Shown piece after piece: positions 11,691 to 14,385 of a DNA stretch of 64,000 nucleotides. Both the position numbers and the translations under genes were made by a program. This DNA is from Scyliorhinus canicula (Eukaryota): positions 28,107,379 to 28,171,378 of the forward strand of contig NC_052160.1 in the NCBI RefSeq assembly GCF_902713615.1, in the 5' to 3' direction. The notes beneath the pieces are model-generated. The model did no database searches and was not told the origin of the DNA. It saw nothing but the letters and a program-made list of their open reading frames with translations. Numbering within the stretch: the stretch's first letter is position 1; every line of letters begins with the position of its first letter.

Positions 11691-12920
11691 TAATGTAAAT
11701 CATGCAAATAAATTTGCCATGTTATTTCGTTTTATTAAACTAAGTTCACTTTGTCTATTCATACTTTGATTTTCTACATATGTTGTTAAGACTTTCTTAA
11801 TAGTAGATTCCAGCATTTTCCGAGCAACTAATATCAGGCTAACTGGTCTGTCGTTCCCTACTCTCCCTTTTCAATAGCAGTGTTGTATGGCTAATTTCCA
11901 ATCTGCTGGGCCTGTTCTAGGATCTAGGGGATTTTTGAAAATCTTCTTTCTTTTAAATTTAGATTACCCAATTATTTTTTCCAATTAAAGGGCAATTTAG
12001 CATGGCCAATCCACCTACTGTGCACATTTTTGGGTTGTGGGGGCGAAACCCACGCAGACACGGGGAGAATGTGCAAACTTCACACGGACAGTGACCCAGA
12101 GCCGGGATCGAACCTGGGACCTCAGCGCCGTGAGGCGGTTATGCTAACCACTAGGCCACCGTGCTGCCCTGTGATGGTTTTCTAAATGTTTTCTAATCCT
12201 CATGTTATATTTTACAACAATATACAAGTTTCTTCTTTTACTGTAACACATTATTCACAGAATCACAGAATAAGTTTGTGCAGAAGAGGCCCTTTAGCCC
12301 ATCGGGTCTGCACCGATGCATGAAAAACACCTGACCTGCCTACCTAACCCCATTTGCCAGCATTTGGCCCATAGTCTTGAATGTTATGATGTGCCAAGTA
12401 CTCATCCAGGTACTTTTTAAAGGATGTGAAGCAACGGGCCTCGACCACCTTCCCAGGAAGTGCATTCCAGATGGTCACCACCCTCTGGGTAAAAGCGTTT
12501 GTCCTCAAATACCCCCAAACCTCCTGCCCGTCACCTTGAACTTGTGTCCCCTCGCAACTGACCCATCTAATAAGGGGAACAGCAGGGAGCACGGTGGCGC
12601 AGTGGTTAGCACTGGGACTACGGCGCTGAGGACTTAGGTTCGAATCCCGGCCCTGCGTCACTGTCTGTGTAGAGTTTGCATATTTGCCCCGTGTCTGTGT
12701 GGGTTTCACCCCCACAAACCAAAGATGTGCAGATTAGGTGGATTGGCCACGCTAAATTGCCCCTTAATTGGAAAAAATAATTGGGTACTCTAAATTTAAA
12801 ATTAAAAAACACTCAGGGGAACAGCGGCTCCCTATCCACCCTGCCCATGCATCTCTTAATCTTGTATACCATTAATCTCATAATTTATCCCTGTACCATG
12901 CCCATCATAATCCTGTACAC

Positions 12921-13690
12921 CAGGCATTTTCAAAGTCGGGGGCGCAACCCACGGGTGGGTCGGGAACGGATGTCGGAGGGTGGCGGAGGCGTCCGTCCCG
13001 GCGTTCCCGATTGAGCAAATCTGCGCGCAACAGCCGGCTTTTAACAATGCGACCAGACAAAAAAAATGCAGCGGCACTGCGCATGGGTGCCCCCTCATCG
13101 GTGTTCTGCGCAGTGAGCGGACACGCATGTGCCGTGCGGCTGCATTTGAAAAAATATGGCCCCAGCCTTTCTGAAGGCCACTCGCAGCCGGCATTGTTAA
13201 AAGCCGTCTGCAAAAAGTTCAGGGAGTGATGTGATTGGTTGCTTTCTGAACTTTGATGTTGTTGAAGTGGAAGTCTCTTTACTCCAAGAATAGTCAGGAT
13301 CTGGGTGTCGCATTTAAGATTGGGAAAGACAATCTCGCTGACAGAGCTTTATTTCCGCATGTTCTGTGCCACAATTGTGCTGTGGAGCTTAACTTTGGAC
13401 AGATGGAGACTCCATACTTTCCAACACCGGAAGGCTTCACCTTCATCCAACAGGTTCCATTAGAGGAGCGTGTACGAGGGCCAAAGGGACACAAAACCAT
13501 TTCCTCCATTTTGTCAGCAGCAAACAAGGTAAGAGAAAATGGTGGGCCACGAAGGTCAGCTGGTGTGGGCTGCGAATGTCGGCCGGCGTGGGTCGCAAAG
13601 GTCAGCCAGCGTGGGCCGCGAAAGTCGGCCGGGTTGGGTCCCGAAGGTTGGTAAAAATGGGTCCCCGGAAAAAAAGTTTGAAAAACACTG
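12921..13690. mobile_element. Non-autonomous hAT (Charlie-like) element carrying gene cargo
   Basis: Left end caggcattttcaaagt versus reverse-complemented right end cagtgtttttcaaact. 8-bp TSD ctgtacac (12913-12920) / ctggacac (13691-13698). Confidence 0.88.
13213..13490 (+). pseudogene. HNRNPU: HNRNPU (SAF-A) SPRY-domain fragment, intronless and frameshifted, inside the hAT element
   Basis: Reads [100 protein letters not shown] and RVRGPKG match recalled HNRNPU better than HNRNPUL1 or HNRNPUL2. Confidence 0.9.
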
Positions 13691-13789
13691 CTGGACACCA
13701 TTATTGTGGCAGTCAATACTGCAACTAATAAAGTACCGTGTCCTTAACTCCCCCTACTAAGGCTATGGCTTTTAAGCTGCATTCCAGTA

Positions 13790-14385
13790 AGAAAGAGAAA
13801 ATGCTGGAAAACCTCAGCAGGTCTGGCAGCATCTGTAGGGAGAGAAAAGAGCTAACGTTTCAAGTCCGATGACTCTGTGTCAAAGCTAACAGACAGAGAA
13901 AGTGGGAAACATTTATACTGTGGAGTGGGAATGAAAGATGAATCATAGCCACAGAAACCCAGAGAAACCGGGTGCTAATGGCCACAGAAACCTAGGGGAA
14001 CGAGTGTTAATGGCAGTCCCCAGAGAGAACAAAAGATGTGAAAGGTCAAACAACAGGGAAACTAACATCAGAGGATGAACTGTGGGTGTGGGGGGAGGGG
14101 AAGACGGAAGCAAAGAGTAGAAAGGTGCCGGAAAGGTGGATAAGATGGGGGGGGGGGAAATAAAATGTATATTAAGAAAGAAATGGTAAAAGACAGTTAA
14201 AATGAAATGAAAACAAATGGGTCGAGGTGGGGCTGATCATCTGAAGTTGTTGAATTCGATGTTCAGGCCGGAAGGCTGTAGCGTGGCTAACCGGAAGATG
14301 GGATTTGGTTCCTCCAGTTTGCGTTGCGCTTCACTGGAACATTGCAGCAGGCCAAGAACAGACATGTGGGTATGGGAGCAACCGC
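13790..14385 (-). mobile_element. Penelope-like element 3' end and pseudo-LTR
   Basis: RKLEEPNPIFRLATLQPSGLNIEFNNFR*; pLTR-like ctcagcaggtctggcagcatctg also found at about 970, 6400, 7760, 23430, 29330 and 49320. Confidence 0.82.

What the first reader, a model, noticed from the sequence alone, without database searches (positions are those of the whole stretch)
12921..13690. Pack-hAT transposon carrying an apparently spliced (mRNA-derived) HNRNPU SPRY fragment
Seen: a 770-bp element with imperfect hAT TIRs and an 8-bp TSD (7/8 match) contains about 280 nt translating to the C-terminal part of the hnRNP U SPRY domain. Recalled knowledge: human HNRNPU has a phase-0 intron between DVITCFA and NFESDE. 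Here the equivalent junction (tgctttctg|aactttgat, 13248/13249) is continuous. Inference: the cargo came from cDNA rather than genomic DNA, so a DNA transposon picked up a retrocopy piece and may have amplified it as a family. Gene-carrying TIR elements are well known in plants (Pack-MULEs) and less commonly described in vertebrates.
Basis: partly seen in the sequence, partly recalled or inferred. Interest (0 to 1): 0.88.

Follow-up and report, generated by a model that had tools for sequence, protein, structure and literature searches.

The report
Shark transposon family carrying spliced HNRNPU piece
A 770-bp cut-and-paste (hAT-like) transposon relic in a catshark genome carries about 280 bases copied from the spliced messenger RNA of the host gene HNRNPU, and elements carrying pieces of this cargo have multiplied to hundreds or thousands of copies in at least two shark species.

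Summary
Window 12921-13690 has CAG-type ends (12/17 inverted match), a 7/8 direct 8-bp duplication that fits the hAT target pattern, shared subterminal motifs, and a sharp 3' repeat boundary.

Inside, 13215-13495 is colinear with HNRNPU coding sequence across an exon-exon junction at 13248/13249. Canonical GT..AG introns sit at exactly that phase-0 site in rodent, bowfin and teleost-like HNRNPU and in a shark's paralogue, HNRNPUL2. RNA reads of the same species run across the junction. They leave the element about 13227, continuing into genuine upstream HNRNPU coding sequence.

The cargo therefore came from spliced RNA. It is an internal fragment without a poly(A) tail, so it is not an ordinary retrocopy. 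The intron in this shark's own HNRNPU gene could not be inspected; it is inferred.

The cargo was amplified. The backbone-cargo junction is about 10^2-fold over-represented and the middle of the cargo about 12-30-fold. The 3' part (about 13360/13391-13690) is about 10^3-10^4-fold over-represented, in two species. Two NCBI shark gene models exonise family copies.

The element is a composite: one arm of a palindromic MITE, the cargo, and a different tail. This is a new variant of animal Pack-TIR elements, and of moderate interest. The scan noted a similar element elsewhere in this genome (unchecked).

The parts
12913..12920 (.). Left copy of the 8-bp target-site duplication, CTGTACAC
   Evidence: It is 7/8 identical to 13691-13698 and fits nTnnnnAn. 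The restored target ATAATCC-TGTACA-CCATTAT is itself a 16/20 palindrome, which explains why inverted repeat I2 runs into the flanks.
12921..12937 (+). 5' terminal inverted repeat, CAGGCATTTTCAAAGTC
   Evidence: I2. It matches the reverse complement of 13674-13690 at 12/17.
12921..13050 (+). Left arm of a palindromic MITE backbone, with the subterminal motif GTGGGYYG at 12945-12952 (-) and 12955-12962 (+)
   Evidence: In some searches, many DNA contigs that match 13172-13211 continue as the reverse complement of 13001-13036. Most relatives therefore have a mirror-image right arm.
13051..13190 (+). Central part of the backbone, with an internal hairpin (13064-13097 / 13114-13147)
   Evidence: I1, 82% complementary. 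This is the part of the element with the lowest depth.
13191..13211 (+). 21-nt stub of the backbone's right arm, an inverted repeat of 13031-13050
   Evidence: I3, 95%. The rest of the arm is replaced by the cargo.
13215..13248 (+). Cargo part 1: the last ~36 nt of the upstream HNRNPU exon (..KFGENDVIGCFL); this copy lacks 'AA' after 13226
   Evidence: In one search the RNA loose end before 13227 reads TGAAGATTACAGTGAGAAGTTCGGAGAGAA, and family contigs carry the AA. One search aligns the family loose end to 13199-13226. One search gives the DVIGCF(I/A)|NF consensus.
13249..13495 (+). Cargo part 2: the first ~246 nt of the next HNRNPU exon (NFD..RVRGPKG(P/H)KT), with an extra T in the run 13278-13280 that breaks the frame
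   Evidence: Searches show it colinear with spliced bowfin and rodent CDS over 13224-13490, at 72-74% nucleotide identity. Searches show the indel. One search gives the SPRY C-terminal match.
13496..13541 (+). Spacer of unknown origin with a donor-like site, AAG|GTAAGA, at 13528/13529
   Evidence: In one search the S. torazame gene model P0060 ends its family-derived exon exactly at the position equivalent to 13528.
13542..13656 (+). Four to five 23-bp subterminal direct repeats carrying the GTGGGYYG motif
   Evidence: D1, D2; 4 matches against 0.14 expected. The joints show the repeat number varies between copies.
13674..13690 (-). 3' terminal inverted repeat (reverse complement CAGTGTTTTTCAAACTT)
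   Evidence: In one search the depth falls from about 38,000 (13640-13696) to 2.8 (13697-13753), which puts the family's 3' boundary here.
13691..13698 (.). Right copy of the target-site duplication, CTGGACAC

Best explanation
Window 12921-13690 is a decayed, non-autonomous cut-and-paste element of hAT type (8-bp target duplication, CAG ends, shared subterminal motif). It is a composite of three parts:
- the left arm and 21 nt of the right arm of a palindromic MITE;
- a ~282-nt internal piece of spliced HNRNPU mRNA (36 nt of one exon joined to 246 nt of the next);
- a different 3' tail with 23-bp repeats.

Inferred mechanism. A double-strand break or an interrupted gap repair in the MITE's right arm was sealed with reverse-transcribed HNRNPU sequence. 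The template was either free cDNA/RNA or a genomic retrocopy, reached by template switching. The chimera kept two ends that the transposase could use, and it was mobilised as one unit.

The long form is the logical ancestor of derivatives that keep only the 5' or only the 3' part of the cargo. The derivative with the 3' part became a very abundant repeat in catsharks.

Shown: the anatomy, the RNA origin of the cargo (given the conserved intron), and the amplification in two species. Inferred: the repair mechanism, mobilisation by a hAT transposase, and the order long form then short forms. The cargo is a broken fragment and encodes no protein.
For: Ends, TSD and motifs.

Sharp 3' boundary: depth 37,926 falls to 2.78.

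Cargo is HNRNPU-type.

Intron at the exact junction, with gtaag..ag ends, in rodent HNRNPU (L004), bowfin HNRNPU (L005), teleost-like HNRNPU contigs (L001-L003) and shark HNRNPUL2 (L007). It therefore predates the U/UL2 split.

Same-species RNA reads (X22):
- They cover 13227-13395 only and cross 13248/13249 at depth 11.
- They carry parent-specific letters (13263 G in 11/11 reads, 13354 C in 23/23) that no DNA family contig has.
- They lack the extra T.
- They run on upstream into EDYSEKFGEN.

No poly(A) tract and no 3' UTR; both ends of the fragment are truncated. Ono et al. 2015 (PMC4516963) documented such fragments of spliced mRNA captured at breaks.

Amplification:
- 16-21 distinct DNA contigs per run cross both the backbone-cargo joint and the exon junction, at about 250-270 times single-copy depth in X3 and X10.
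- The middle of the cargo is at about 12-30 times.
- 13391-13690 is at about 10^4 times, with 50-85 distinct contigs.

Family copies occur in S. canicula and S. torazame gene models (P0125, P0060).
Against: - This shark's own HNRNPU gene structure was not seen.
- The two halves of the element differ 20-100-fold in abundance, and the right end is not the mirror of the left arm. The 770-bp unit could therefore be a mosaic rather than one mobile unit.
- The 5' flank 12842-12920 is itself repetitive, so there is no depth drop at 12921.
- An X3 contig (12811-12958, 96% identical) crosses the 5' end.
- The TIR match is only 12/17, and the 5' end reads CAGGC rather than the canonical YARNG.
- No second full copy with its own TSD, no empty site and no autonomous partner were available.
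- The depths are summed k-mer depths of Logan contigs, not true copy numbers.
Confidence: 0.72

Rival explanations
1. The capture was from DNA, not from free cDNA. A processed HNRNPU pseudogene already lay in the genome, and a piece of it was copied into the transposon by the usual Pack-type template switching during gap repair. It shares the RNA origin of the sequence with the best explanation and differs only in the immediate template.
For: Pack-TIR formation by template switching on genomic DNA is the documented route in animals (PMC8277862). That paper also notes a retrogene (ARF6) lying inside a MER20 element. The cargo has no intron.
Against: No HNRNPU retrocopy was found or could be searched for. 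The family consensus is about 98% identical to the live mRNA over 13227-13395, so a retrocopy donor would have to have been young.
Confidence: 0.3
2. The 770-bp stretch is a mosaic and not a mobile unit. It would be a truncated palindromic MITE lying next to a cargo-bearing element of another family, and the 7/8 'TSD' and the weak TIR match would be chance.
For: The left part is at about 10^2 times single-copy depth and the right part at about 10^4 times. The right arm of the backbone is missing, and the tail is unrelated to the left arm apart from its tip and one motif. There is no depth step at 12921.
Against: The backbone-stub-to-cargo joint is itself multi-copy, with many distinct contigs in two species. 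The chance of a 7/8 TSD is about 4e-4, and both 8-mers fit nTnnnnAn around a palindromic target. GTGGGYYG clusters at both ends, with 5 of the window's 11 matches falling in 1.2% of its length.
Confidence: 0.15
3. Ordinary LINE-mediated retroposition put an HNRNPU retrocopy into a pre-existing MITE, and later deletions trimmed it.
For: The cargo lacks the intron. LINE and SINE activity is massive in this genome: the SINE at 12594-12800 reaches depths of 10^5-10^6.
Against: The cargo has no poly(A), no 3' end of the mRNA and no duplication flanking it. It is a 282-nt piece from the middle of the coding region. Two independent deletions would be needed to remove more than 2 kb.
Confidence: 0.07
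4. The capture was genomic because this shark's HNRNPU gene has lost that intron.
For: This species' HNRNPU locus could not be read.
Against: The intron is present in every HNRNPU gene examined and in a shark's HNRNPUL2, so its absence would need a lineage-specific loss.
Confidence: 0.04

Closest known systems
Animal Pack-TIR elements (Tan et al. 2021, Nat Commun, PMC8277862), e.g. Pack-hAT-N8_XT of Xenopus tropicalis and the Ssk-FB4 family of Drosophila
   Same: A host gene fragment lies between the ends of a non-autonomous TIR transposon with a target-site duplication. The chimera can be re-mobilised and become multi-copy.
   Different: That survey discarded intronless captures of multi-exon genes by design. 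Most of its cases are single-copy, and the multi-copy ones have a few copies. Here the cargo crosses an exon-exon junction, and parts of it reach about 10^2 to 10^4 copies.
Plant Pack-MULEs and other Pack-TYPE transposons
   Same: TIR elements that pick up and amplify gene fragments, which are often non-coding and sometimes transcribed.
   Different: They belong to a different superfamily (Mutator, 9-11-bp TSD) and, from my own knowledge, are typically captured at DNA level with introns retained. Here the element is hAT-like and the cargo is spliced.
RT-product-mediated double-strand-break repair (Ono et al. 2015, Sci Rep, PMC4516963)
   Same: Internal pieces a few hundred nt long, truncated at both ends, of spliced mRNA (Pcnt, Inadl) are inserted at breaks without poly(A), often with microhomology. 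This is the same anatomy as the cargo here.
   Different: That was an experimental CRISPR break in mouse zygotes. Here the recipient is a transposon, which then multiplied the insert. Microhomology here is only suggestive (A-run at 13211-13216).
Processed pseudogene (LINE-mediated retrocopy)
   Same: The sequence is derived from spliced mRNA.
   Different: There is no poly(A), no 3' end of the mRNA and no flanking duplication of the cargo, and it lies inside TIRs.

Membership tests
hAT superfamily, non-autonomous element | 8-bp target-site duplication | tested here: met
   CTGTACAC and CTGGACAC are 7/8 identical and directly abut the ends.
hAT superfamily, non-autonomous element | Target consensus nTnnnnAn (from my own knowledge of the family) | tested here: met
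   Both 8-mers have T at position 2 and A at position 7. The restored target is palindromic.
hAT superfamily, non-autonomous element | Short TIRs beginning YARNG | tested here: inconclusive
   The 3' end reads CAGTG, which fits. The 5' end reads CAGGC, which fits at 4 of 5. The TIRs match at 12/17.
hAT superfamily, non-autonomous element | An autonomous relative with a hAT transposase and the same termini and subterminal motifs | not testable with these tools
   No search of this genome is offered, and no related copy lies in the window.
hAT superfamily, non-autonomous element | Several copies with the same ends and different 8-bp duplications | not testable with these tools
   Only depth and contig counts are available. 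They show multi-copy junctions but not TSDs.
Pack-TIR (as defined by Tan et al. 2021) | Non-TE host sequence between the TIRs of a DNA transposon, with a TSD | tested here: met
   HNRNPU sequence lies at 13215-13495, between the ends at 12921 and 13690.
Pack-TIR (as defined by Tan et al. 2021) | A parental copy exists elsewhere and is not itself TE-flanked | tested here: inconclusive
   The parent mRNA was seen in RNA reads, with its own upstream exon. The parental locus itself was not inspected.
Pack-TIR (as defined by Tan et al. 2021) | The captured sequence is not an intronless copy of a multi-exon gene (the pipeline's filter against retroduplicates) | tested here: not met
   The cargo crosses an exon junction without the intron. 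That pipeline would have discarded it.
Processed pseudogene / LINE-mediated retrocopy | Poly(A) tail, the 3' end of the mRNA, and a flanking duplication of the insert | tested here: not met
   There is no A-tract after 13495. The fragment is mid-CDS. No direct repeat flanks the cargo.
cDNA capture at a double-strand break (RMDR, Ono et al. 2015) | An internal spliced-mRNA fragment truncated at both ends, without poly(A) | tested here: met
   criteria as.
cDNA capture at a double-strand break (RMDR, Ono et al. 2015) | Microhomology at the junctions | tested here: inconclusive
   At the 5' joint, 1-3 A's may be shared between backbone and mRNA. The pre-capture sequence at the 3' joint is unknown.

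The most novel reading that the evidence does not exclude
Capture of cDNA into TIR transposons is a recurrent process in catshark genomes rather than a one-off. The scan's unchecked notes list other spliced or retrocopy cargos in hAT and Harbinger elements of this genome. On this reading, it hands RNA-derived gene pieces to a cut-and-paste amplifier. The resulting 10^3-10^4 dispersed HNRNPU-derived segments, about 98% like the mRNA in the family's long form, would then act on the host. They could be a source of antisense, si- or piRNAs against HNRNPU, or ready-made exon and donor modules, as in the two gene models that already splice them.
Probability: 0.15. Interest if true: 0.8.

Novelty: new variant of a known kind. 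Interest (0 to 1): 0.55.

Why it matters
Gene-fragment capture by TIR transposons is well studied in plants and has only recently been surveyed in animals. The main animal screen removed intronless captures on purpose, so RNA-derived cargos are a blind spot.

This case links two processes usually treated apart: reverse transcription of a host mRNA, and cut-and-paste amplification. It also shows that such a chimera can reach very high copy number in a vertebrate.

There are practical consequences. Thousands of HNRNPU-like segments can mislead gene annotation: one shark model made from a family copy is named 'HNRNPUL1 isoform X2'. They can also mislead RNA-seq mapping, and they supply splice donors to host genes.

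Tried and rejected
- Other copies in the window: none.
- Family copies through protein searches: the third homologous-protein search returned only P0060 and ordinary HNRNPU exon ORFs. Shark Logan contigs seem not to be in that protein set.
- P0158 (12 repeated matches) looked like a string of family copies but is a bacterial surface protein; discarded.
- Shark HNRNPU protein: the full-length search listed only the best 120 of 394 hits, all tetrapods and ray-finned fishes.
- Direct view of the intron in shark DNA contigs: no contig with the parent-specific letters was laid.
- An apparent GT donor in organism B contigs after 13291 (..AAGAATGGTGAGTGAGCC): I considered an extra shark intron and rejected it. 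That exon is uninterrupted in every gene examined, including shark HNRNPUL2, and RNA reads run through the site. I read it as a rearranged subfamily. Its continuation matches nothing in the window.
- Rfam, tRNA and bacterial promoter scans of the region: nothing relevant.
- The search of earlier findings by sequence: blank.

Full report
**Observation**

The sequence at 12921-13690 begins CAGGCATTTTCAAAGTC and ends, read as the reverse complement, CAGTGTTTTTCAAACTT. That is 12 of 17 positions alike. It is flanked directly by CTGTACAC (12913-12920) and CTGGACAC (13691-13698), a 7/8 match. The chance of 7/8 or better at fixed positions is 25/65536 by my arithmetic.

Both octamers fit the hAT target pattern nTnnnnAn (family knowledge from memory). 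With the element removed, the target reads ATAATCC-TGTACA-CCATTAT, a 16/20 palindrome. This explains why the longest terminal inverted repeat found by the tool (I2) runs about 19 nt into both flanks.

Four to five 23-bp direct repeats fill 13542-13656 (4 matches against 0.14 expected). Their core, GTGGGYYG, also occurs twice, in both orientations, 25-40 nt from the 5' end. Five of the window's 11 matches to this 8-mer lie in the element, which is 1.2% of the window. So both ends carry the same subterminal motif.

**The cargo**

The translations read ..GSDVIGCFL|[10 protein letters not shown] and, after a 1-nt frameshift, [70 protein letters not shown]...

- HMMER against 1.8 billion representatives and the word-indexed search both give HNRNPU family proteins.
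- Identity is 78-80% to HNRNPU of sturgeon, gar, bowfin and mammals. It is lower to the HNRNPUL1/UL2 representatives (60-65%).
- At nucleotide level the window aligns colinearly with the spliced CDS of bowfin and rodent HNRNPU over 13224-13490 (72-74%) and less well with shark HNRNPUL2 (66%).
- The stretch covers the last third of the SPRY profile and the linker behind it.

**The intron test**

I could not obtain this species' HNRNPU locus. NCBI shark loci came back without DNA.

I therefore mapped exons in every locus I could fetch. A canonical gtaag..(c/t)ag intron lies exactly between the codon for the last residue of ..DV(I/V)(G/T)CF(A/I) and the codon for N of NF(E/D):

| Locus | Gene | Intron length |
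|---|---|---|
| L004 | rodent HNRNPU | 494 nt |
| L005 | bowfin HNRNPU | 287 nt |
| L002, L003 | teleost-like genomic contigs | 77 nt |
| L001 | teleost-like genomic contig | 117 nt |
| L007 | sevengill shark (Heptranchias perlo) HNRNPUL2 | 1429 nt |

The intron is shared by HNRNPU of bony vertebrates and by a shark's paralogue. It therefore predates the U/UL2 duplication and the shark/bony-fish split. A catshark HNRNPU without it would need a private loss.

In all these genes the following exon runs uninterrupted from NF.. to ..KKDCE. In the window..GGTTGCTTTCTG|AACTTTGAT.. is continuous.

**RNA of the same species**

Raw oligo-dT RNA reads of organism A (X22) were laid on 13170-13395.

- 38 reads aligned, all in one orientation, covering only 13227-13395. 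They cross 13248/13249 at depth 11.
- At 13227 nine reads leave the window with the consensus TGAAGATTACAGTGAGAAGTTCGGAGAGAA (agreement 0.99). Read in frame with the following TGATGTGATTGG, this encodes EDYSEKFGEN-DVIG, the genuine upstream part of the HNRNPU exon (compare EDYGEKFDENDVIGCF).
- The reads are therefore the parent mRNA, not the element.
- They differ from the window copy at 13259, 13262, 13263, 13292, 13332, 13348 and 13354, and they lack one T of the run 13278-13280.
- DNA contigs of the family share all of these parent letters except 13263 and 13354, and most keep the extra T. So the family's founder was about 98% like the mRNA, and this copy has drifted a further 3% or so.
- Family contigs and the mRNA both have GAGAATGATG where the window has GAG--TGATG. 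With that 2-nt gap, homology to the mRNA runs back to about 13215 (AAGTTC).
- About 36 nt (12 codons) of the upstream exon are therefore present, which makes the junction call robust.
- Homology ends about 13495, about 15 nt before the end of that exon. No A-tract follows.

**The carrier is a composite**

In DNA runs of organisms A and B, many contigs that match 13172-13211 continue not into the cargo but into TTGCGCGCAAATTTGCGCAATCGGGAGCGC and its variants. These align to the reverse complement of 13001-13036.

So the commoner relative is a palindromic MITE whose right arm mirrors the left arm 12921-13050. Here only 21 nt of that right arm remain (13191-13211, 95% complementary to 13031-13050). 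The cargo follows, and then a tail (13496-13690) that resembles the left arm only in its last 17 nt and in the GTGGGYYG motif.

**Amplification**

Summed contig depths relative to the unique flank 13697-13753 (2.8, 5.9 and 12.5 in X1, X3 and X10) give rough multiplicities:

| Segment | Multiplicity |
|---|---|
| Left arm | about 10^2 |
| Backbone-stub-to-cargo joint and exon junction (13226-13273) | about 250-270-fold in X3 and X10, in 16-21 distinct contigs per run |
| Middle of the cargo (13282-13390) | about 12-fold in A, 13-32-fold in B |
| About 13360/13391-13690 | about 10^4-fold, in 50-85 distinct contigs |

The depth falls to single copy right after 13696, which fixes the 3' boundary.

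These are k-mer depths of Logan contigs, not copy counts. The orders of magnitude and the contig counts are still clear, and they hold in two species labels. Two further labels hold a little of the sequence.

The 5' and 3' cargo pieces are adjacent parts of one mRNA segment. The long form seen here is therefore the logical ancestor of the subfamilies that keep only one piece. This ordering is an inference.

Independent sightings:
- NCBI gene model P0125 lies in assembly GCA_902713615.2. The same accession root is given for Scyliorhinus canicula sScyCan1.1 in PMC11979771. The model translates through a family copy right to the 3' TIR.
- P0060 of S. torazame, named 'HNRNPUL1 isoform X2', consists in part of a family copy. 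It ends that exon at the AAG|GTAAGA site equivalent to 13528/13529.
- The scan's notes list a similar hAT element with a spliced hnRNP U fragment on another piece of this genome (s1-219842). I could not check it.

**Mechanism**

An internal 282-nt fragment, truncated at both ends, of a spliced mRNA, without poly(A) or a flanking duplication, is not what target-primed retroposition leaves. It is what Ono et al. (PMC4516963) observed when breaks in mouse zygotes were sealed with reverse-transcribed Pcnt and Inadl fragments of about 300-800 nt, often with microhomology.

My best reading is that a break or an aborted gap repair in the hairpin-prone right arm of the MITE was filled with HNRNPU cDNA. 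The template could equally have been a young genomic retrocopy reached by template switching; the data cannot separate the two. The chimera then acquired or retained a tail with a compatible end, and it was mobilised by a hAT-type transposase. These steps are inferred.

The cargo carries a family-wide frameshift and in-frame stops, so no protein function is proposed. All RNA reads over 13227-13395 in X22 carry parent letters, so this run gives no evidence that the long form is transcribed.

**Weak points**

- The 5' flank 12842-12920 is itself a roughly 10^2-10^3-copy repeat, a degenerate 24-27-nt tandem motif (D3/D4). This motif resumes for a few bases after the insertion. As a result there is no depth step at 12921.
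- One X3 contig (12811-12958, 96% identical) crosses the 5' end. It may be the same locus in another individual or a paralogous copy.
- No second complete copy, empty site or autonomous partner could be examined.

I therefore give 0.72 to the whole explanation, about 0.9 to the RNA origin of the cargo, and about 0.9 to its amplification.

**Comparison and novelty**

Animal Pack-TIRs are known: 370 in 100 genomes, including Pack-hAT cases, mostly single-copy (PMC8277862). That screen deliberately removed intronless captures, and its multi-copy families have a handful of members. A hAT-like chimera whose cargo crosses an exon junction, and whose derivatives reach thousands of copies in sharks, is therefore a new variant of a known kind. 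Literature searches found no description of it.

Noticed in passing
window 12594-12800: A SINE lies just upstream of the element, followed by an A-rich tail. Its depth is extreme (10^5 to over 10^7 summed k-mer depth in every DNA and RNA run). ARAGORN finds no intact tRNA fold in it.
   Followed up: partly
window 13754-14095: Another high-copy repeat starts 60 nt downstream of the element (summed depth 10^4-10^6 in all runs). It is separated from the element by a truly single-copy stretch, 13697-13753.
   Followed up: no
window 12842-12920 and 13699-13712: The insertion site lies in a degenerate 24-27-nt tandem motif (..taccat..ataatc(c/t)tgta..) that is itself moderately repetitive. The immediate target is a 16/20 palindrome centred on the duplicated octamer.
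   Followed up: partly
window 13172-13211 (loose ends in runs X3, X10): Most relatives of the element's left part are palindromic (foldback-like) MITEs with arms of at least ~130 nt. The window copy keeps only 21 nt of the second arm.
   Followed up: partly
window ~13279-13292 (run X10, organism B): Six contigs share the cargo up to ..ACTCCAAGAATGGT and then continue GAGTGAGCCAAAGAAC. The depth profile shows a subfamily 20-30 times more abundant than the long form that ends here. Its continuation could not be placed.
   Followed up: partly
proteins P0060 (S. torazame) and P0125 (assembly GCA_902713615.2): These are NCBI gene models built partly from copies of this repeat. P0060 is named an HNRNPUL1 isoform although only about 37 residues derive from HNRNPU sequence. 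It is likely a misannotation caused by the family.
   Followed up: partly
window 35673-37271: A G-rich minisatellite: about 45 copies of a 28-nt unit (GGGGGGGGCGGGTGTTGGGGGGGGAGA) followed by 24- and 29-nt variants. GC is 0.66 and GC skew +0.56. It is a candidate G-quadruplex array.
   Followed up: partly
RNA run X22 at window 13269 and 13337: The parent HNRNPU mRNA reads split at two sites (G>A in 5/9 and 15/23 reads). This suggests two alleles or two expressed HNRNPU copies in this species.
   Followed up: no
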